IMG/VR virus record: IMGVR_UViG_3300030102_006934
Coordinates: 1-64,000 of that record
DNA length: 64,000 nucleotides
Direction: 5' to 3' (one strand)
Shown here piece by piece: positions 1-60,407 of this stretch (position 1 is the stretch's first letter; each line of letters begins with the position of its first letter). Below the pieces are notes generated by a model. The model was not told the origin of the DNA and ran no database searches. It saw nothing but the letters and a program-made list of their open reading frames with translations. The position numbers were made by a program, and so were the translations under genes.

Positions 1-246
1 AATGAAGAACAAACATTAGTTTTGGAAAATCAATTAGTAGAAATAGACGGTAATAGAGATAAGTCTTTAATAAGAGATTTTGCAAATAATATGAGGGTTG
101 GTGATGCTCAGGGTCTTAGAGATTATATATCTACTATTGAGTGTGGTATAGACATGAACATTGAAGTTAGGACTCCTGGAGGTGAGTCCGTTCCCATGTT
201 TCTTCCCATTACACCAAGGTTTTTTTGGCCTAACTCCAGAATATAA
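1..246 (+). CDS. Tail assembly chaperone / baseplate-hub assembly protein (T4 gp26-like), 5'-truncated by the window edge
   Basis: Frame is open from base 1 (NEEQTLVLENQ...). C-terminus FANNMRVGDAQGLRDYI...PGGESVPMFLPITPRFFWP resembles gp26-like/TAC C-termini. Lies upstream of the tape measure gene. Confidence 0.6.
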   Translation, partial: NEEQTLVLENQLVEIDGNRDKSLIRDFANNMRVGDAQGLRDYISTIECGIDMNIEVRTPGGESVPMFLPITPRFFWPNSRI

Positions 247-53957: not shown

Positions 53958-54905
53958 TTGGATAACAAAGACGAATTAAATAAAATAGCTAAAGAAATTA
54001 GGGATGTAATTGCTAATAGACAAAAGGAACTGGACCTTTCTTTTGTTGAAGACACCCATACTTACTATATGAAAGATTTAAACGGTGTACTTAAATCCGA
54101 CTACCCAAGTGTGTCAACAGTGATTAAACAATTTTATACAGAATTCCCAGAATTAAATAAATCATGGCAGATGTGCAATGGTGATTTAATTGAACAAGAC
54201 GAATTACTAAAAAAATGGAGAGCCACAGCTGATTATGCTAATAGTAAAGGTTCCAGAGTACACTACCTACTAGAGAAAGACCTATTAGATATGTACGGCT
54301 CATATAAAGATGTCAGAAAACCCATATTTGATTGTGACGAACAACAAGTGTCTGATGGTAACGCAATGATTGATGCTGGTCACGATTTTATCAGACTAAT
54401 GCACAGGAGAGGCTGGGTGTTACTAGACACTGAGATGGTATTGGGTAGTCCAGAACTGGCTTATACAGGACAACCAGATAAGGTTTGGATTAAGGTTATT
54501 GATGGGACCTTAGGATTTCTAATAACTGACTGGAAAACAAATAAACCAAAGAACTTTGAAGTTCACGCATATACCGAACCAATGTTAGAACCTTTTGAAG
54601 ATTATATGGACACAGCCTTAAGTCATTACATGATACAATTACCACTATATGGTAGATTAATATTAGATATGTTAAAAGGTACTAAATTTAACGATATTAA
54701 ATTTTTTGGTTGTACTATTGTTCACTTAACTTCAGGTGGTAATCATAAAGAATACATTGTTGATGATAATTTTATGGAAAGGGTTTTAACAATGGACCCA
54801 TTACCTAGGATAAAAGAAGTTATGGAATATAAAAAGTTACAGATTAATAGAAATAAAAAAAGAATGCGTTTAGTCGAACAAGAATTGAAAAAAATAAATG
54901 ATTAA
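53958..54905 (+). CDS. PD-(D/E)XK (RecB/Cas4-superfamily) exonuclease
   Basis: YPSVSTVI, KGSRVHYLLE, DTEMVL, GQPDKV, ITDWKTNK and HYMIQLPLYG; TTG start. Confidence 0.85.
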   Translation: MDNKDELNKIAKEIRDVIANRQKELDLSFVEDTHTYYMKDLNGVLKSDYPSVSTVIKQFYTEFPELNKSWQMCNGDLIEQDELLKKWRATADYANSKGSRVHYLLEKDLLDMYGSYKDVRKPIFDCDEQQVSDGNAMIDAGHDFIRLMHRRGWVLLDTEMVLGSPELAYTGQPDKVWIKVIDGTLGFLITDWKTNKPKNFEVHAYTEPMLEPFEDYMDTALSHYMIQLPLYGRLILDMLKGTKFNDIKFFGCTIVHLTSGGNHKEYIVDDNFMERVLTMDPLPRIKEVMEYKKLQINRNKKRMRLVEQELKKIND

Positions 54906-55719
54906 TATGGTAAAAAAAGTCATACATTTAGCTGATATACATATTAGAACTTATAGAATGCACGATGAATACGGTGAAGCATTCAAATCCACATTAAAGA
55001 AGATAAGAGAACTGGTTTCTGATTATAAAAGAGAAGAAATTAGAATAGTAATTGCTGGCGATTATGTTCATCAAAAGATTACAATTTCAAATGAATTATT
55101 AATATTAGGTACTTGGTTCTTAAGGAAGTTAGAAAAAATAGCCCCAGTTATTATTATAGCTGGAAATCATGATTTATTAGAGAATAATAAAGATAGAATG
55201 GATTCCATAACACCAATGGTTAAGTTACTACCAGACCTAGATATAAGGTATTATAAAAACTCAGAATGTATTATGGATGATAATATTGTTTGGTGTGTCT
55301 ATTCTATCTTTGATGACAACTCTAGACCAGATATTGAAACAGCCAGAATAGAGTATGGAGATGATAAGTCATATATAGGTCTATATCATGCTCCAATAGT
55401 TGGTGCAACAACTGACATTGGATATGAGTTTACCGAATCAACATCCCTGGAACACTTTGAAGGCTGTGACATGGTAATGCTTGGTGATATACATAAAAGA
55501 CAATCATTTAACTATAAGGGAACACCAATAGCTTATTCATCTTCACTGGTACAGCAAAACTTTGGTGAGTCAGTAGATAAACACGGATTTTTATTGTGGG
55601 ACTTACAATCAAAGACATTTGATGAATACGACATAGAAACTAACTATGGGTTTTATCAATTCAAAATTAATTCGTTAGAAGAATTAGCTAACGGAGAAGA
55701 GAGATTAACAAATAAATAA
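54898..55719 (+). CDS. sbcD: SbcD/Mre11/gp47-like metallophosphoesterase nuclease (short form)
   Basis: HLADIH, AGDYVH, AGNHD, LYHAP and MLGDIHKRQ, followed by YSSSLVQQNFGE. Confidence 0.92.
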   Translation: MINMVKKVIHLADIHIRTYRMHDEYGEAFKSTLKKIRELVSDYKREEIRIVIAGDYVHQKITISNELLILGTWFLRKLEKIAPVIIIAGNHDLLENNKDRMDSITPMVKLLPDLDIRYYKNSECIMDDNIVWCVYSIFDDNSRPDIETARIEYGDDKSYIGLYHAPIVGATTDIGYEFTESTSLEHFEGCDMVMLGDIHKRQSFNYKGTPIAYSSSLVQQNFGESVDKHGFLLWDLQSKTFDEYDIETNYGFYQFKINSLEELANGEERLTNK

Positions 55720-56519
55720 TGAAACTACCCAAGGACATAAAAGATGAAATATGGCAATACTGCAAATCCAATAACATTACTAATGTTGATGAATTTATAA
55801 CCAGTATGTTAAGTAGGGGGTTTACTGCCGAGAAATTTGGTTCGGTTCCATGGGAAAAACCAGCTAAGATTAAAGAGGTTGAAAAGGTGGTTGAAAAAGA
55901 GGTTATTAAGGAGGTACCCGTTGAGGTCATTAAAGAAGTTGAAAAGATAGTTGAGAAAAAAGTTGAGGTACCTGTAGAAGTGATTAAGGAGGTTGTAGTC
56001 GAGAAAGAAGTACCAGTTGAGGTTATTAAAGAGATAGAAAAAATTGTTGAAAAAGAAGTTTATGTGACAGATGACGAGGCCGTAAAGTCCTTACAGAAAG
56101 AATTAGATGATATGGTAAAAACACATAAAAAAAATGTGGATAATTTAATAAAAGAAGTTGAAAATAATAATAATGTTTTAAGTTTAAAAGAAGATAAAAT
56201 AAAAACTTTAGAAGAAAATATAGAGGATAAAAAATCAGAAATATCTAAATTAAATGGTAGTTTGGGGACATTAAAAATAATGTTAAATGACACTAGTAAA
56301 GATGAAGAAATTAAGAAACTAAACGATAATTTACTATTATTTAAAAATGAATCTAAAGAAAGGGGTAAGAAAATTAACGAGTTGAATAAAAAAATTAAAT
56401 CTTTAGAAAATTCAATAGCCCCTAAAACTGAAGAAGAAGATAAGGGTGATATTTACGGTGACAATAAAAAGGGTTTATTTGGTTCAAATATTAGCGATGT
56501 ATGGAACAAGAAGAAATGA
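55719..56519 (+). CDS. Hypothetical protein with E/K/V/P (alveolin/articulin-like) repeats and coiled coil
   Basis: EKVVEKEVIKEVPVEVIKEVEKIVEKKVEVPVEVIKEVVVEKEVPVEVIKEIEKIVEKEV, then a long heptad region; overlaps both sbcD and sbcC. Confidence 0.8.
   Translation: MKLPKDIKDEIWQYCKSNNITNVDEFITSMLSRGFTAEKFGSVPWEKPAKIKEVEKVVEKEVIKEVPVEVIKEVEKIVEKKVEVPVEVIKEVVVEKEVPVEVIKEIEKIVEKEVYVTDDEAVKSLQKELDDMVKTHKKNVDNLIKEVENNNNVLSLKEDKIKTLEENIEDKKSEISKLNGSLGTLKIMLNDTSKDEEIKKLNDNLLLFKNESKERGKKINELNKKIKSLENSIAPKTEEEDKGDIYGDNKKGLFGSNISDVWNKKK
55867..56060 (+). repeat. Imperfect repeats encoding EVIKEVPV / VEKIVEKEV
   Basis: About 65 aa made almost entirely of E, K, V, I and P. Confidence 0.85.
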
Positions 56520-58870
56520 TATTAAAAGACGTGGTTAAAATACCACCTTATGCTAAAATTAAGGTTTATTGGGACGATAAACCTGAAAACTATTCTAGAG
56601 AATCTAGAGCTAGAGTTAAGAAATATTTCTCTAAAAAGTATGGTATAGCCCCACAAAATGTAAATGTTGTTTATAGACCAGTTAAGTTAAACAAGGACGG
56701 TAAACTAATCGAAGTTGATGGGGCAAACATAAATAATATAATGAGTATCCCATACCAAAGAAACTTATTCAAAGAGTGGTTAGATAGAGAAGCTAAAGAA
56801 GTCGACTTTAATAGGATAATTTCACTAGATAACAAAGTTAATGGTGAGTTAACACTTGAACTAGAAGAAAAACTACATAAGAAATACAAACTATCCTGGT
56901 TATTAATAAATAATTTTCTTTCATTTGGGCCTAATAATTATTTACCTATAGAAAATTATGGTGGCTTTACCGTTGTTAATTCGGAACCAGCTAATCAAGG
57001 TGGTAAAACCACACTAACAGTTGATGCCATTAAATTTCTTTTTTTTGGTAAAACAACTAAAACTGATAAGAATGAAGAGGTGTTTAATCAGTTTAATGAA
57101 GAAACTACTTTAGTCGTTAGAGGAATGATTAACATTGAAGGTGAGGATGATTTTATAATAGAGAGAAAACTAGATAGAAAACCAAAGAGAAAGGGTGGGT
57201 GGAACATAACAAATAAATTAACCTATTATAGAATTTTACCAGATGGTGAAGAAGAAGAACTAAACGATGAGGATGCAAAAAAAACAACTGAAGTTATAAA
57301 AGAAACTGTAGGTACCGAGAAAGATTTTGATTTAGTTGTTTTAGCAACATCTAAAAACTTAGACGACCTAGTGGATTCAACAGCTGGTGAGAGTGGTAAA
57401 TTATTAACCAGATTTATAGGTTTAGAAATACTATCCTTAAAAGAAGGTGTGGTCAGGAAAATGCATAATGATTTTACTAAAAAAATGAAATCTAATTTAT
57501 ACGACACAGAAACACTTAAAGAAGAAATAGAAGAGCATAATACCGAACTAGAAGAGTTAAACATAGATAAAGATAAAAACAATAAAGACTTATCATTAGA
57601 AAAAAAATTAAATAAGAGTTTACAAGATAAAAAAATTAAGTTAGTTGAATCTAAAATTAAAATTGATGACGATGTTTTATCTTTAAACCCCAAAACACTA
57701 GAAAGTGAAATAGAAAGTATAACTAAATTAGGTAAATCACACAAAGAGTCCATAAAAAAATACAATGAAGAGATAAAGTCAATTGGTGTTATAAAATTCG
57801 ATGAAGACTTACATTTTAATTTAACAAATTCAAAAACAACTATGCTTGGGGATATTGCGGTTAAGGAATCTGAAATTAATAGAATTAAAGCAATTGTGGA
57901 AGACTTAGTTATGGGTGGAACATGTCAAGCATGTAATAGACCTTTAGATAATGTAGACAATACTAATCATATAAATAAGCATAATAGTGAAATTAATAAC
58001 CTTAATAGGGAAAAAGAAACTATAACCAGGAAATTAACAAATATTAACAAAAAAATAGAGTCAATGTCAGAGTCTAAGAAACTTATTGACAATAAAAACA
58101 AAATTGAATTAAAAAAAGACAGACTAGAGGTAGAAATTGACGGATTAAGGGTAGATATTAAGAATAAAATGTCTGATTTATCTAAATATAAATTAAATTT
58201 AGATGGAATAGATAAAAATAAATCTATAGATAGTGAAATAACCTCTATTGATACTAAAATAGTCGTTTCAGATAAACAAATAGACGATATTAATGAAAAA
58301 TTAAGAGATATAGCAATAAAAATAGATAGTAATAGTAAAGATATAAAACTTAAAGAAGGGCTTATAAATACAATCTCTAAAGAGAAAGAAATTGAGACTA
58401 TTTTTAAACTTTATATAGATATGATTGGTAAAAAGGGAATATCTAAATTAATATTAAGGTCTGTTTTACCAATAATTAATGGCGAACTACAGAGATTATT
58501 AGAGGATATAACTGATTTTGAAGTTGAAGTTTACATTGATGATAAAAACGAAGTTAGATATTTAATAATAAAGGATGGTGTTGAGAAGCCCCTTAAGTCT
58601 GGTAGTGGTTACGAGTTAACTACATCTAGCATAGCTTTAAGATGTGTATTGGGTAAAATGTCATCACTACCAACACCTAACTTTATAGTATTTGATGAAG
58701 TAATGGGTAGAGTTGCCGCTGAAAATTTATCTAAAATGAAACCACTATTTGATAGAATATCTGATATGTATGATATTGTTTTTTTTATAACTCAGAATGA
58801 TACCGTAAAAGATTGGTCAAATAAAATAATTACGGTCATAAAAGAAAATAACATATCTAGACTTAAATAA
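56516..58870 (+). CDS. sbcC: SbcC/Rad50/gp46-like SMC ATPase with an extra N-terminal domain (ORF track start 56501; ATGA overlap at 56516)
   Basis: LINNFLSFG, Walker A ANQGGKTT, long coiled coil with Zn hook CQAC, signature variant KSGSGYE, Walker B/D-loop IVFDEVMG, and FFITQ. Confidence 0.92.
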   Translation: MILKDVVKIPPYAKIKVYWDDKPENYSRESRARVKKYFSKKYGIAPQNVNVVYRPVKLNKDGKLIEVDGANINNIMSIPYQRNLFKEWLDREAKEVDFNRIISLDNKVNGELTLELEEKLHKKYKLSWLLINNFLSFGPNNYLPIENYGGFTVVNSEPANQGGKTTLTVDAIKFLFFGKTTKTDKNEEVFNQFNEETTLVVRGMINIEGEDDFIIERKLDRKPKRKGGWNITNKLTYYRILPDGEEEELNDEDAKKTTEVIKETVGTEKDFDLVVLATSKNLDDLVDSTAGESGKLLTRFIGLEILSLKEGVVRKMHNDFTKKMKSNLYDTETLKEEIEEHNTELEELNIDKDKNNKDLSLEKKLNKSLQDKKIKLVESKIKIDDDVLSLNPKTLESEIESITKLGKSHKESIKKYNEEIKSIGVIKFDEDLHFNLTNSKTTMLGDIAVKESEINRIKAIVEDLVMGGTCQACNRPLDNVDNTNHINKHNSEINNLNREKETITRKLTNINKKIESMSESKKLIDNKNKIELKKDRLEVEIDGLRVDIKNKMSDLSKYKLNLDGIDKNKSIDSEITSIDTKIVVSDKQIDDINEKLRDIAIKIDSNSKDIKLKEGLINTISKEKEIETIFKLYIDMIGKKGISKLILRSVLPIINGELQRLLEDITDFEVEVYIDDKNEVRYLIIKDGVEKPLKSGSGYELTTSSIALRCVLGKMSSLPTPNFIVFDEVMGRVAAENLSKMKPLFDRISDMYDIVFFITQNDTVKDWSNKIITVIKENNISRLK

Positions 58871-58902
58871 TTTGGAAATATCAAGTAATTATTATATATT
58901 TG
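58871..58902 (+). promoter_or_regulatory. Bacteroidota sigma-A type early promoter
   Basis: TTTG 58871-58874, 20-nt spacer, TATATTTG 58895-58902. Confidence 0.75.
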
Positions 58903-58921
58903 AATAAATAAAAAAAATAAG

Positions 58922-59485
58922 ATGGAAATGAAATTTAGAAATTACTGTATTGTTTTACTAGGTAAAACAAAAGGAGTTAAAATGGAAATAGCTAAAATAG
59001 CGGACGGGGACCCAAGATTTTTAGATGCTAAAGGATTAACAATCAGTACGTTTATTAGTGTAGCTGAACCAAAAGAATTATCTGATTATTTTAAATCATT
59101 AAATAGAAATTTTATGTTGTTCGATATGAATACCAATTTTTCTGGTTATAATCTAGAAAATGAAAAACTACATGAGACTTTATTTTCAGATATAATCGAA
59201 AATAATAGTAACAATAATTTAGAGGACATGTCAAATAGATTAATAGATGATATTAATGAATCTATAATTATAAACCCAATTAGTGGTTCTAGTAAACACT
59301 TTAATGAAAAATTGAGAAGAGTTGTTGAAGATATAAACTTTGAACCCAAAGCTGTTAAATTAGACCTAAATAACTTATCAAAGACTGATAGAGAAACAAT
59401 GATTAATAAAATTTTGGATAAAGGTTATGAAAATTTCAGTGAAAATGATAAAAAAATATTAAAAAAAATAGGTATGTCTTTCTAA
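58922..59485 (+). CDS. Hypothetical protein with a DUF6576-like C-terminal helical motif
   Basis: C-terminal MINKILDKGYENFSENDKKILKK resembles the ID.ILDK...G..SLT..EK..L motif. Confidence 0.7.
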   Translation: MEMKFRNYCIVLLGKTKGVKMEIAKIADGDPRFLDAKGLTISTFISVAEPKELSDYFKSLNRNFMLFDMNTNFSGYNLENEKLHETLFSDIIENNSNNNLEDMSNRLIDDINESIIINPISGSSKHFNEKLRRVVEDINFEPKAVKLDLNNLSKTDRETMINKILDKGYENFSENDKKILKKIGMSF

Positions 59486-59490
59486 AAAAC

Positions 59491-59520
59491 TTTACTTTTT
59501 CAATAAATTACGTATAATAA
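59491..59520 (+). promoter_or_regulatory. Possible second-class promoter TTTACT-N16-TATAAT upstream of the sigma gene
   Basis: TTTACT 59491-59496 and TATAAT 59513-59518. Confidence 0.5.
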
Positions 59521-59573: not shown

Positions 59574-60407
59574 ATGAGTAAGACATACGTAAATTCAAAC
59601 GGTGACGATAGCATATCAAAATACTTTAAAGAAATCAGAAAAAGCGACCTACTTAGCCCAGACGAAGAGGTTGAATTAGCAAAAAGAATACAAAAAGGTG
59701 ATAAATTAGCAACAGACAAGTTAGTAAATTCTAATTTGAAGTTTGTTATATCAATTGCAAAAGAATACCAAGGTCAAGGCTTATCCCTTAGCGACCTAAT
59801 AAGTGAGGGTAATCTAGGTCTAGTAAAAGCAGCTAGTAGATTCGACCACACAAGGGGTTTTAGGTTTATATCATATGCTGTTTGGTGGATAAAACAATCT
59901 ATAATACAGAGCTTAAATGATAATGCAAGAATAATTAGATTACCAGCCAATGTTATTGCTAAGATTTCTAATATGAAAAAAGAAATCGAAAAAGAACAAT
60001 CTATTAGAGATAGAGATATTTCCATAGAGGAAATGAGGAGCTCAGAAAACTTCGTTGACTTATCAAAAATACCATCTTGTGGTTCTATAAATGAAGTTAT
60101 AAATGATGAAGGGGATGAATTACATGAACTTATTGAAGATAAAAGTAATTTAAAAGATGATGGGATATATGATATAGATGATAGAGTTAAAAAAGAAATT
60201 GGTGTTGCACTAAATAAACTAAATAACAGAGAAAAAGACATTATAATCTCTTATTTTGGCTTAAATAGTGACATTGAGTGCATGACACTTGAAGCTATAG
60301 GTGATAAATTTGGTATTACTAAAGAGAGAGTAAGACAATTAAAAGAGAAGGCCATTCGAAAAATGAGGCACAATGCAAGTGATATTTTTGATGCTTTAAA
60401 TGAATAA
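59574..60407 (+). CDS. Phage-encoded sigma70-family factor (RpoD/Bacteroidota SigA-like, no region 1.1)
   Basis: Region 1.2 DSISKYFKEI...LLSPDEEVELA; region 2 NLKFVISIAKEY...DLISEGNLGLVKAASRFDHTRGFRFISYAVWWIKQSI; region 4.2 MTLEAIGDKFGITKERVRQLKEKA. Confidence 0.95.
   Translation: MSKTYVNSNGDDSISKYFKEIRKSDLLSPDEEVELAKRIQKGDKLATDKLVNSNLKFVISIAKEYQGQGLSLSDLISEGNLGLVKAASRFDHTRGFRFISYAVWWIKQSIIQSLNDNARIIRLPANVIAKISNMKKEIEKEQSIRDRDISIEEMRSSENFVDLSKIPSCGSINEVINDEGDELHELIEDKSNLKDDGIYDIDDRVKKEIGVALNKLNNREKDIIISYFGLNSDIECMTLEAIGDKFGITKERVRQLKEKAIRKMRHNASDIFDALNE

What the first reader, a model, noticed from the sequence alone, without database searches (positions are those of the whole stretch)
54898..56880. 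Rearranged Mre11-Rad50: SbcD stops after its nuclease domain and its C-terminal part appears fused to the front of SbcC
Seen: SbcD is only about 270 aa and ends soon after the last phosphoesterase motif. SbcC has about 120 extra residues (YAKIKVYWDDKPENYSRE...NIMSIPYQRNLFKEWLDRE...VDFNRIISLDNKVN) before the usual start (KYKLSWLLINNFLSFG). Known: Mre11/SbcD/gp47 carry a capping domain and a helix-loop-helix that binds the Rad50 coiled coil. Inference: those elements moved onto Rad50, so the nuclease domain is a detachable subunit, with a foreign gene sitting at the split point. The ABC signature is also atypical (KSGSGYE instead of LSGG).
Basis: partly seen in the sequence, partly recalled or inferred. 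Interest (0 to 1): 0.65.

Follow-up and report, generated by a model that had tools for sequence, protein, structure and literature searches.

The report
Phage Mre11-Rad50 split inside capping domain
In this marine jumbo phage and hundreds of relatives, the DNA-end nuclease Mre11/SbcD is cut short inside its capping domain, and the missing piece plus the Rad50-binding helices sit at the front of Rad50/SbcC; this shifted subunit boundary seems not to have been described, though single-chain Mre11-Rad50 fusions are known.

Summary
SbcD (54898-55719, 273 aa) has all phosphoesterase motifs but ends one strand into the capping domain. SbcC (56501-58870, 789 aa) carries about 130 conserved extra residues before its ABC head.

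The nearest relatives, including cultured phages Mel-JY01 and pT24 and a 735-kb megaphage, encode one fused SbcD-SbcC chain. The window's two proteins align to it colinearly, and the break falls in a loop of about 17 residues.

An AlphaFold model of a fused homologue matches solved Mre11/SbcD structures through the capping domain, and matches E. coli SbcD through its Rad50-binding helix-loop-helix. So the extension is the rest of the capping domain plus the helix-loop-helix.

A complex prediction pairs the last SbcD strand with the first strand of the extension (ipSAE 0.78; best control 0.01).

The arrangement is conserved: 80 of 80 viral loci, and 300 clusters at 50% identity.

- The intervening gene is a conserved clade-specific gene, not foreign cargo. 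One distant lineage is split without it.
- The odd signature, SG[FLYM]E, is family-wide.
- The state most likely arose by fission of a known Mre11-Rad50 fusion class.

All structural evidence is predicted. This is a new variant of a known kind, of moderate interest.

The parts
53958..54905 (+). Upstream PD-(D/E)XK-type exonuclease gene (315 aa). It overlaps the SbcD start by 8 nt and is the first gene of the conserved module.
   Evidence: phrog_298 exonuclease, E 5.8e-18. It lies in the same position in related loci L012, L097 and L098.
54898..55647 (+). SbcD/Mre11 phosphoesterase core, residues 1-250, with motifs I-V intact (D13, H15, D55, N90, H91, H164, D197, H199).
   Evidence: Pfam Metallophos and phrog_100. 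Invariant columns in A1. Motif alignment. The model has pLDDT 84.9 and matches Mre11/SbcD structures at Z 21-23, while plain metallophosphatases align only to 1..245-251.
55651..55719 (+). Orphan first strand of the capping domain (residues 252-257, FYQFKI), a 16-residue tail (258-273) and the stop codon.
   Evidence: Maps to strand 239-244 of the fused homologue model. It has low confidence when SbcD is folded alone (pLDDT about 50 for residues 251-270). It is predicted to pair with SbcC residues 19-25.
55719..56519 (+). ORF2 (266 aa), a conserved clade-specific protein of unknown function. It has an N-terminal globular domain of about 45 aa, a variable EKIVEV-type repeat, a variable coiled coil and a conserved D-I-Y-G-E motif near the C-terminus.
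   Evidence: No significant Pfam, PHROG, phage-record or Atlas match. Homologues lie directly upstream of SbcC in about 78 of 80 loci. Alignment A3.
56549..56716 (+). SbcC residues 17-72: the remainder of the Mre11 capping domain (strand 19-25, helix 33-47, strands 53-63 and 69-71).
   Evidence: Colinear with residues 269 onward of the fused megaphage protein. Maps to elements 270-318 of the fused model, which solved nuclease-plus-capping structures cover up to about 307-314. Forms the interface with SbcD 248-260.
56726..56845 (+). SbcC residues 76-115: helices equivalent to the Mre11/SbcD helix-loop-helix Rad50-binding domain, here covalently upstream of Rad50.
   Evidence: Maps to helices 321-360 of the fused model. 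Only full-length E. coli SbcD chains from SbcCD complexes (6s6v_B, 7yzo_B, 7yzp_B, 6s85_B) extend the alignment to model residues 362-376, chain residues 390-395.
56846..56890 (+). Linker of about 15 residues between the HLH and the first strand of the ABC head.
   Evidence: Low-confidence stretch 363-376 in the fused model. Variable columns in A2.
56891..58870 (+). Rad50/SbcC proper. Walker A is PANQGGKT (K169, 57005-57007). The zinc hook is C475-Q-A-C478 (57923-57934). The signature is S702-G-Y-E705 (58604-58615). Walker B is D732-E733 (58694-58699). The H-loop position is Q765 (58793-58795).
   Evidence: phrog_77, E 3.9e-47. tblastn to Herelleviridae SbcC from residue 133. Motif census over 207 sequences.

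Best explanation
This is a working phage Mre11-Rad50 (SbcCD) DNA-end-processing machine whose subunit boundary has been shifted.

The nuclease chain (273 aa) keeps the full phosphoesterase core and only the first strand of the capping domain. The rest of the capping domain (strand-helix-strand, SbcC residues about 17-72) and the helix-loop-helix (HLH, residues about 76-115) are encoded as an N-terminal extension of Rad50/SbcC. In ordinary Mre11, that HLH grips the base of the Rad50 coiled coil.

Inferred mechanism: the HLH binds the coiled-coil root of its own chain in cis. The nuclease is recruited non-covalently when its orphan strand (residues 252-257) adds to the sheet supplied by SbcC residues 19-25, and the helix 33-47 packs on the nuclease. 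This rebuilds an intact capping domain and hence the usual M2R2 head.

Inferred history: canonical two genes, then a single-chain SbcD-SbcC fusion (a known class), then fission at a surface loop inside the capping domain. Fusion and fission recurred at the same loop. ORF2 and other cargo genes later settled in the gap.

Shown: the ORFs, motifs, conservation, colinearity with fused relatives and distribution. Predicted only: the folds, the strand complementation and the cis HLH contact.
For: - **Colinearity.** The window's SbcD residues 4-258 match residues 1-251, and its SbcC residues 17 onward match residues 269 onward, of one 1202-aa fused ORF in megaphage LR756501. Fused ORFs also occur in Microcystis phage Mel-JY01 (1066 aa), Tenacibaculum phage pT24 (1310 aa) and P0347, P0391-P0395.
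- **Fold.** The AF2 model of fused P0347:1-410 has pLDDT 83.7. Nuclease-plus-capping structures (3tho_B Z 25.3, 7dog_A 25.1, 4lty_B 23.8, 1ii7_B 22.2) align to model residues 1..307-314. Plain metallophosphatases stop at 234-236. Full E. coli SbcD chains reach 362-376, which is the HLH. The mapping puts the break between model strands 253-255 and 270-276.
- **SbcD alone.** The window's own SbcD model gives 224-244 aligned residues, against 271-286 for the fused model. Its last strand has low confidence when folded alone.
- **Complex prediction** of SbcD with SbcC residues 1-145: ipSAE 0.78 (runs 0.78, 0.78, 0.80), best of 3 controls 0.01. The mark was reached by 58 of 80 solved complexes and 2 of 110 mismatched pairs; these counts hold only roughly because my own alignments were used. 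The runs agree in at least 67% of contacts and the partner's pLDDT is at least 57. The lowest-error contacts are 253:20, 255:22 and 257:24, a strand-strand register.
- **Purifying selection and spread.** The extension has 25 invariant columns. All 80 of 80 IMG/VR loci have a short SbcD plus an extended SbcC. The best 120 SbcD hits are all 263-289 aa, out of 1499 hits. There are 300 clusters at 50% identity, with the domain N-terminal in nearly all of the best 150.
- **Shared ancestry with fusions.** Split and fused forms make one clade against E. coli, T4 and Herelleviridae SbcD (95/92*), and all share GDIH instead of GHxH in motif V. The same substitution is reported for Mimivirus R555 (PMC3175470).
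- **Catalytic sites.** The catalytic and ATPase motifs and the zinc hook are present.
Against: - No sequence-level similarity links the extension to any solved Mre11/SbcD C-terminus (PDB profile search best E 0.06; hhalign against E. coli SbcD probability 0.3). The homology call rests on one AlphaFold model of a homologue 26-36% identical in this region.
- The extension's own confidence in the complex run is modest (pLDDT 57-59). The tool warns that a pass can reflect memory of solved intact capping domains.
- The HLH match has high rmsd (4.3-6.0 A) and the cis contact with the coiled coil was not modelled.
- The window copy has Q, not H, at the H-loop (Q765) and P at the first Walker A position, so ATPase kinetics may differ.
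- The direction of evolution is not resolved. The tree interleaves split and fused forms and has long branches.
Confidence: 0.75

Rival explanations
1. The extension is an unrelated accessory domain of SbcC, for example an extra DNA-binding or regulatory module. The short SbcD works as a minimal nuclease without a capping domain and binds Rad50 some other way.
For: No sequence similarity to the Mre11 capping domain or HLH. No Pfam family covers the extension. The extension has only middling pLDDT in the complex run.
Against: The extension is colinear with the stretch between the nuclease and the ABC head in every fused relative. The predicted fold of that stretch aligns with solved capping domains and with the E. 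coli SbcD HLH. Strand pairing with the SbcD tail is predicted with controls at 0.01. Short SbcD and extended SbcC co-occur in 80 of 80 loci.
Confidence: 0.1
2. The split was caused by insertion of ORF2, a mobile or foreign gene, into an ancestral fused gene. ORF2 is therefore the reason for the rearrangement.
For: ORF2 sits exactly at the break in both copies of the record and in about 78 of 80 relatives. The same slot also collects other cargo: an AAA ATPase, a Macro domain, T5orf172 and endonuclease-like ORFs. Mobile-element interruptions of SbcD and SbcC are frequent in relatives.
Against: ORF2 has no nuclease, integrase or other mobility signature and no homologue outside this module. Its N-terminal domain and DIYGE motif are conserved like those of a working partner. 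Lineage L096 has the same split with TAATG-overlapping genes and no ORF2. T4 also has two small ORFs between genes 47 and 46 without any split domain.
Confidence: 0.25
3. The two parts are rejoined at RNA or protein level (intron splicing, ribosomal bypass or frameshift, or a split intein), so the cell actually makes a fused protein.
For: Relatives do carry an in-frame intein in the Walker A loop (P0261) and intron- or homing-endonuclease-like interruptions. Fused natural homologues exist.
Against: There is no Rfam intron or other RNA family in 54000-59500. The intervening DNA varies from 0 to 2.9 kb and encodes conserved proteins in other frames. The terminal pieces are only about 15 residues each, far too short for split-intein halves. 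Each ORF has its own start codon overlapping the preceding stop.
Confidence: 0.03
4. Artefact or decay: a sequencing or assembly frameshift, or a pseudogenised fused gene.
For: The record is a metagenomic scaffold that may be chimeric.
Against: The same ORF lengths recur in hundreds of independent assemblies from many studies. All catalytic motifs are intact. Both parts are under strong conservation.
Confidence: 0.01

Closest known systems
Single-chain Mre11/Rad50 (SbcD/SbcC) fusion proteins: Mimivirus R555 class (Yoshida, Claverie and Ogata 2011, PMC3175470), phrog_35725, Microcystis phage Mel-JY01, Tenacibaculum phage pT24 and megaphage LR756501
   Same: They belong to the same sequence lineage. 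Split and fused forms make one clade, 95/92*, against canonical SbcD. They share the GDIH motif V (reported for R555). They share the compact capping domain, HLH and short linker in front of the ABC head, and the same SG[FLYM]E signature.
   Different: Here the chain is broken by a stop and a new start in a loop inside the capping domain, usually with one or more genes in between. The nuclease is therefore a separate polypeptide, and part of its capping domain stays on Rad50.
Canonical two-gene Mre11-Rad50: E. coli SbcD (400 aa)/SbcC, T4 gp47 (339 aa)/gp46, Herelleviridae exonuclease II/I
   Same: The domains are the same overall: phosphoesterase core, capping domain, HLH, ABC head, coiled coil and CxxC zinc hook. 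The gene order is the same, nuclease first. T4 likewise has small ORFs (46.2, 46.1) between the two genes.
   Different: The canonical boundary lies after the HLH, so the non-covalent interface is HLH to coiled coil. Here the boundary lies after the first capping strand, so the inferred non-covalent interface is within the capping domain and the HLH is covalently part of Rad50. Motif V is GHxH in canonical forms and GDIH here.
Phage genes fragmented by mobile elements, such as homing-endonuclease or intein interruptions of T-even-type genes (from general knowledge, not tested here)
   Same: Relatives of this module show such interruptions. SbcD is broken at about residue 205 by an endonuclease-like ORF of about 300 aa. 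There is an intein, or its remnant, in the SbcC Walker A loop.
   Different: The split studied here has no recognisable mobile element. It is fixed across a very large clade, and both products are conserved as functional halves.

Membership tests
Mre11/SbcD nuclease (calcineurin-like phosphoesterase, COG0420) | Phosphoesterase motifs I-V (DxH, GD, GNH[DE], H, GHxH) | tested here: met
   D13-I-H15, G54-D55, G89-N-H-D92, H164 and G196-D-I-H199 are present. Motif V has D for the first H, as in all fused and split relatives. Pfam Metallophos E 4.8e-10, phrog_100 E 6.8e-23.
Mre11/SbcD nuclease (calcineurin-like phosphoesterase, COG0420) | Mre11-type fold of the nuclease domain | tested here: met
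   The predicted model (pLDDT 84.9) has Mre11/SbcD structures as best matches: Foldseek E 3.5e-11, VIA Z 21-23. This is a prediction, not a solved structure.
Mre11/SbcD nuclease (calcineurin-like phosphoesterase, COG0420) | Complete capping domain on the same chain as the nuclease | tested here: not met
   Only about 23 residues (one strand plus a tail) follow the core. The rest maps to SbcC residues 17-72.
Mre11/SbcD nuclease (calcineurin-like phosphoesterase, COG0420) | C-terminal helix-loop-helix that binds the Rad50 coiled-coil base | tested here: not met
   It is absent from the 273-aa chain. Equivalent helices are SbcC residues 76-115.
Mre11/SbcD nuclease (calcineurin-like phosphoesterase, COG0420) | Mn2+-dependent exo/endonuclease activity stimulated by Rad50 and ATP | not testable with these tools
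   Needs biochemistry.
Rad50/SbcC ABC ATPase (SMC-like) | Walker A, Walker B and signature motifs | tested here: met
   Walker A is PANQGGKT (K169). Walker B is D732-E733, in 207 of 207 sequences. The signature S702-G-Y-E has S, G and E invariant and a hydrophobic third residue, F, L, Y or M, family-wide in place of the usual G. phrog_77 E 3.9e-47. No Pfam model reaches threshold.
Rad50/SbcC ABC ATPase (SMC-like) | H-loop histidine | tested here: not met
   The window copy has Q765. 56 of 207 relatives have Q and 148 have H, including the second copy in the same record.
Rad50/SbcC ABC ATPase (SMC-like) | CxxC zinc hook in the middle of a long coiled coil | tested here: met
   C475-Q-A-C478. 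CxxC is found in 103 of 105 full-length relatives. The coiled coil itself was not tested with a dedicated predictor.
Mre11-Rad50 fusion proteins (PMC3175470; phrog_35725) | Nuclease and ATPase on one polypeptide | tested here: not met
   Separate ORFs in three different frames with an 801-nt gene (stop included) between them.
Mre11-Rad50 fusion proteins (PMC3175470; phrog_35725) | Sequence kinship with fused members (clade and diagnostic substitutions) | tested here: met
   37% identity of the nuclease to the megaphage fusion. One clade at 95/92*. Shared GDIH. Weaker second-rank hits to phrog_35725, E 1.5e-15 and 6.4e-8.

The most novel reading that the evidence does not exclude
The split is not neutral bookkeeping but creates a regulated three-part machine. 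ORF2, always wedged against and translationally coupled to SbcC, would be a third subunit or adaptor of this phage MR complex. It has a small globular head, an extensible EKIVEV repeat, a coiled coil and a terminal DIYGE peptide. In this reading it plays a functional role like that of eukaryotic Nbs1/Xrs2 or CtIP-type partners. The detachable nuclease would let the phage control when and where Mre11 is docked onto Rad50 through the split capping domain.
Probability: 0.12. Interest if true: 0.75.

Novelty: new variant of a known kind. Interest (0 to 1): 0.5.

Why it matters
Mre11-Rad50 is universal, and its mechanism depends on how the nuclease dimer is tethered to Rad50 and repositioned on it. 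The tether is the HLH on the coiled coil, with a flexible link to the capping domain.

This very large natural clade appears to have moved the non-covalent joint from the HLH/coiled-coil contact into the middle of the capping domain, while making the HLH part of Rad50. That is a ready-made natural experiment on which connections must be covalent.

It also gives a compact, separable nuclease and a minimal capping domain for structural work. It is a clean example of a gene boundary relocated by fusion followed by fission inside a domain.

For annotation, it explains why the SbcD of these phages looks truncated and why their SbcC has an unassigned N-terminal domain. The conserved ORF2 is a candidate new partner of a phage MR complex.

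Tried and rejected
- **Sequence routes to the identity of the extension gave nothing.** Pfam found no family. A profile search of PDB sequences had a best E of 0.06, on unrelated proteins. hhalign of the extension profile against E. coli SbcD gave probability 0.3. tblastn of the extension against phage records hit only the megaphage fusion, at E 0.03.
- **No close DNA relative** in cultured phage records (megablast).
- **The megaphage fusion could not be found in IMG/VR** for folding. The fused representative P0347 from the profile search was folded instead.
- **A first mixed alignment (A4) was discarded.** It misplaced the SbcD C-termini. A6, with fused rows as bridges, was checked by eye before use.
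- **ORF2 stays unassigned.** There were no significant Pfam or PHROG hits, no phage-record hit for its N-terminal 51 aa, and the best Atlas hit scored 0.76, which is only a lead.
- **Intron or recoding idea:** no Rfam match, and no excess of promoters or terminators.
- **Direction of evolution was not resolved.** The tree was meant to show fission from a fused ancestor, but split and fused forms interleave and long branches meet.
- **My first idea about the record is wrong as stated.** I thought the N10 gap at 90.7 kb was the chimeric joint. Contigs of four runs bridge the gap. The suspect point is the 340-nt repeat just after it.

Full report
**What is there.**
The window is the first 64 kb of a 380,343-bp IMG/VR virus record with about 30% G+C. 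At the flagged place four + strand genes are packed head to tail:
- a PD-(D/E)XK-type exonuclease (53958-54905, phrog_298);
- a short SbcD/Mre11 (54898-55719, 273 aa);
- ORF2 (55719-56519, 266 aa);
- SbcC/Rad50 (56501-58870, 789 aa).

The SbcD stop shares a base with the ORF2 start (TAATG). The ORF2 stop overlaps the SbcC start region. Promoter-like and terminator-like sites are not above chance, so the genes read as one operon.

SbcD hits Pfam Metallophos (residues 7-200) and phrog_100. SbcC hits phrog_77 over residues 80-788 but no Pfam model. Canonical phage SbcC proteins (Herelleviridae) align only from SbcC residue 133.

**It is conserved, not an accident.**
- A word search with SbcC residues 1-140 found 283 proteins. 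The best 120 are almost all 782-815 aa.
- The SbcD search found 1499 proteins. The best 120 are all 263-289 aa.
- The extension is strongly conserved, with 25 invariant columns among 17 sequences that are 41-77% identical to the window's.
- A profile of it, run against 1.84 billion cluster representatives, gave 300 hits at E <= 0.001. In the best 150 the domain sits at the N-terminus of SbcC proteins of about 770-930 aa, or of fragments. One hit has it internal in a 1065-aa fused protein. None has it at the C-terminus of a stand-alone SbcD of about 400 aa.
- In 80 of 80 IMG/VR loci a short SbcD lies 0.3-2.9 kb upstream of the extended SbcC.
- The same module occurs on a contig binned with a Methanobacterium MAG and on a contig of a Prochlorococcus single-cell assembly.
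- The stretch is held by marine metagenomes of several studies.

**What the extension is.**
The key clue came from relatives that encode one fused chain. These are:
- a 1202-aa ORF in the 735-kb megaphage LR756501;
- a 1066-aa ORF in Microcystis phage Mel-JY01 and a 1310-aa ORF in Tenacibaculum phage pT24;
- P0347 and P0391-P0395 from metagenomes.

The window's SbcD residues 4-258 align with residues 1-251 of the megaphage protein. Its SbcC residues 17 onward align with residues 269 onward. So the two window proteins are colinear with one chain, and the break falls in a loop of about 17 residues.

I folded the first 410 residues of fused P0347 with an alignment in which fused rows bridge the SbcD and extension rows (A6, checked). 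The mean pLDDT was 83.7. A VIA second look at the Foldseek hits gave three tiers:
- Structures that hold nuclease plus capping domain cover model residues 1 to about 307-314. Examples are T. maritima Mre11 3tho_B (Z 25.3, rmsd 3.3, 271 aligned), S. aureus SbcD 7dog_A (Z 25.1), E. coli SbcD 4lty_B (Z 23.8) and P. furiosus Mre11 1ii7_B (Z 22.2).
- Plain metallophosphatases stop at 234-236.
- Only full-length E. coli SbcD chains from SbcCD complexes (6s6v_B, 7yzo_B, 7yzp_B, 6s85_B) carry the alignment on, to model residues 362-376 and chain residues 390-395. That is the helix-loop-helix.

Mapping through A6 gives these elements. The window's SbcD holds strands 230-235 and 240-245 and the first capping strand 252-257, then a 16-residue tail. 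SbcC supplies strand 19-25, helix 33-47, strands 53-63 and 69-71, helices 76-80, 83-96 and 103-115, and a linker of about 15 residues. The ABC head starts near residue 131.

The window's own SbcD model (pLDDT 84.9) agrees with this. The phosphoesterase core ends near residue 250. Fewer residues align to Mre11 structures (224-244, against 271-286 for the fused model). The last strand is poorly predicted on its own. No sequence-level similarity to solved Mre11/SbcD C-termini was found, so this identification is structural and predicted.

**Do the halves fit?**
I ran one complex prediction of SbcD against SbcC residues 1-145.
- The ipSAE was 0.78 (runs 0.78, 0.78, 0.80). The best of three controls was 0.01.
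- That mark was reached by 58 of 80 solved complexes and 2 of 110 mismatched pairs. These counts hold only roughly, because my own alignments were used.
- The runs agree in at least 67% of contacts, and the partner's pLDDT is at least 57.
- The most confident contacts are SbcD 253, 255 and 257 with SbcC 20, 22 and 24. This is a strand-to-strand register, plus SbcD 222/226 and 263-273 with SbcC 30-47.

This is what a capping domain rebuilt from two chains would look like. The tool's caveat applies: the pass may reflect memory of intact capping domains, and it is not a measurement.

**Are the enzymes intact?**
SbcD has motifs I-V.

Motif V reads GDIH in every split and fused member, against GHxH in E. 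coli, T4 and Herelleviridae. Yoshida et al. reported the same replacement for Mimivirus R555.

SbcC has Walker A (K169), Walker B (D732-E733) and a CxxC hook (475-478). Its signature is S702-G-Y-E. The census is 207 of 207 S, 205 of 207 G and 204 of 207 E, with the third residue always F, L, Y, M or C. The odd signature is therefore a family trait shared with the fusions.

One real oddity: the H-loop residue is Q765 in the window copy and in 55 relatives, while 148 relatives have H.

**The gene in the gap.**
ORF2 is not foreign cargo. Homologues sit directly upstream of SbcC, usually overlapping its start, in about 78 of 80 loci. They share four features:
- an N-terminal domain of about 45 residues;
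- an EKIVEV-type repeat of variable length;
- a variable coiled coil;
- a conserved D-I-Y-G-E motif.

No library explains it. Between SbcD and ORF2 the relatives carry varying extras: a small ORF of about 76 aa, an AAA ATPase, a Macro domain, T5orf172 and endonuclease-like ORFs.

A distant lineage (L096) has the same split with a 261-aa SbcD and a 910-aa SbcC that overlap by TAATG, with nothing in between. So the split does not need ORF2. T4 also keeps two small ORFs between genes 47 and 46.

**History.**
On a tree of the nuclease domain, split and fused forms make one clade (95/92*) apart from E. coli SbcD, T4 gp47 and a Herelleviridae SbcD. Inside that clade the two states interleave. For example, the record's second SbcD pairs with fused P0347 at 97/99*.

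Starred branches force at least two changes of state. Long branches (L096, pT24 and the outgroups) make the details unsafe, and the direction cannot be read from this tree.

A boundary inside a domain cannot be reached from the canonical boundary without a fused intermediate, and fusions are the nearest relatives. So the most economical history is canonical, then fused, then fission at the capping loop, with repeated re-fusion or re-fission. Mre11/Rad50 fusions and their recurrent origin were described in 2011 (PMC3175470). I found no description of this split in the papers searched.

**Second copy and the record.**
The record holds a second, diverged copy of the whole module:
- SbcD' at 284977-285786, 47% identical to the window's;
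- three small ORFs;
- ORF2' at 286892-287524;
- SbcC' at 287861-290236, 39% identical to the window's.

This second copy is part of a colinear block. About 45 genes at 1-83 kb have counterparts at 226-310 kb with 25-70% identity.

The N10 gap at 90,703 is bridged by contigs in four runs. A 340-nt repeat just after it (90,791-91,130) recurs at 95% identity just before the record's end, and it shows doubled depth or a drop in depth in some runs.

I therefore suspect that the record joins a 91-kb piece of one phage to a complete genome of about 289 kb from a related phage. This is not proven. Either way, it gives two independent examples of the split.

**Verdict.**
This is a real, widespread and apparently undescribed variant of a known system. 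Its account of the intervening gene and of the signature needs correcting. Confidence in the split-capping-domain model is about 0.75, because all structural evidence is computational.

Noticed in passing
Whole record G000:C1. Blocks 1-83 kb (inside the window up to 64 kb) and 225.9-310 kb; repeat 90,791-91,130 and 379,897-380,236.: About 45 genes, structural and replication, occur twice in colinear order at 25-70% aa identity. A 340-nt repeat (95% identical) lies just after the N10 gap and again about 100 nt before the record's end. The gap itself is bridged by contigs in 4 runs, but depth changes at the repeat. The 380-kb record may be a 91-kb fragment of one phage joined to a complete genome of about 289 kb from a related phage.
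   Followed up: partly
window 58793-58795 (SbcC Q765): The H-loop histidine of the ABC ATPase is glutamine in this copy and in 55 close relatives; 148 relatives and the record's second copy keep histidine. The first Walker A position is P rather than G or A in most of the clade.
   Followed up: partly
window 55719-56519 (ORF2); A3: A conserved orphan protein family is tied to the SbcC start. It has an invariant Y14, N18, G34, E38-K39, G41 and P44 head, an EKIVEV repeat whose copy number varies (98 to 384 aa total length), a coiled coil and a terminal DIYGE motif. Its function is unknown; it could be a partner of the complex.
   Followed up: partly
L012/L013/L060 2546-4415; also L018, L046, L047, L076, L082, L083: In some relatives SbcD is itself broken after GDIHKR (about residue 205) by an ORF of about 300 aa. 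That ORF has CxxC pairs and a weak Vsr/PD-(D/E)XK endonuclease likeness (DUF7487). The rest of SbcD follows as a 75-aa ORF. It looks like a homing-endonuclease or intron insertion.
   Followed up: partly
P0261 (931 aa); L046/L047/L073/L075 SbcC of 933-936 aa; L012 5001-5582: An insertion right after the Walker A GGK begins with Cys and ends with HN followed by Ser in P0261, so it is intein-like. In other loci the SbcC ORF stops about 190-206 aa in at the same site, which suggests a degenerate intein or another element.
   Followed up: no
window 58922-59485 and 59574-60407: A 187-aa ORF (MEMKFRNYCIV...) and a sigma-70-type factor follow SbcC. The same two genes follow it in the second copy and in L097 and L098. 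The module exonuclease-SbcD-ORF2-SbcC-ORF-sigma is therefore syntenic across the clade.
   Followed up: no
L098 (QCKH01000004.1, Prochlorococcus sp. AG-409-L21, 84-kb contig) and L097 (contig binned as a Methanobacterium MAG, 170 kb): Phage-like contigs carrying this module sit in a single-cell Prochlorococcus assembly and in an archaeal MAG bin. The first may hint at a host or an infected cell. The second is probably a binning error.
   Followed up: no
L091 (Staphylococcus phage qdsa001) 1-4535: In this cultured Herelleviridae phage the annotated exonuclease genes around SbcC are interrupted by a transposase gene. This is another case of a fragmented MR module.
   Followed up: no
window 1-64000: ARAGORN finds no tRNA gene in the whole 64-kb window. 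GC skew is positive throughout and nearly all long ORFs lie on the + strand.
   Followed up: no
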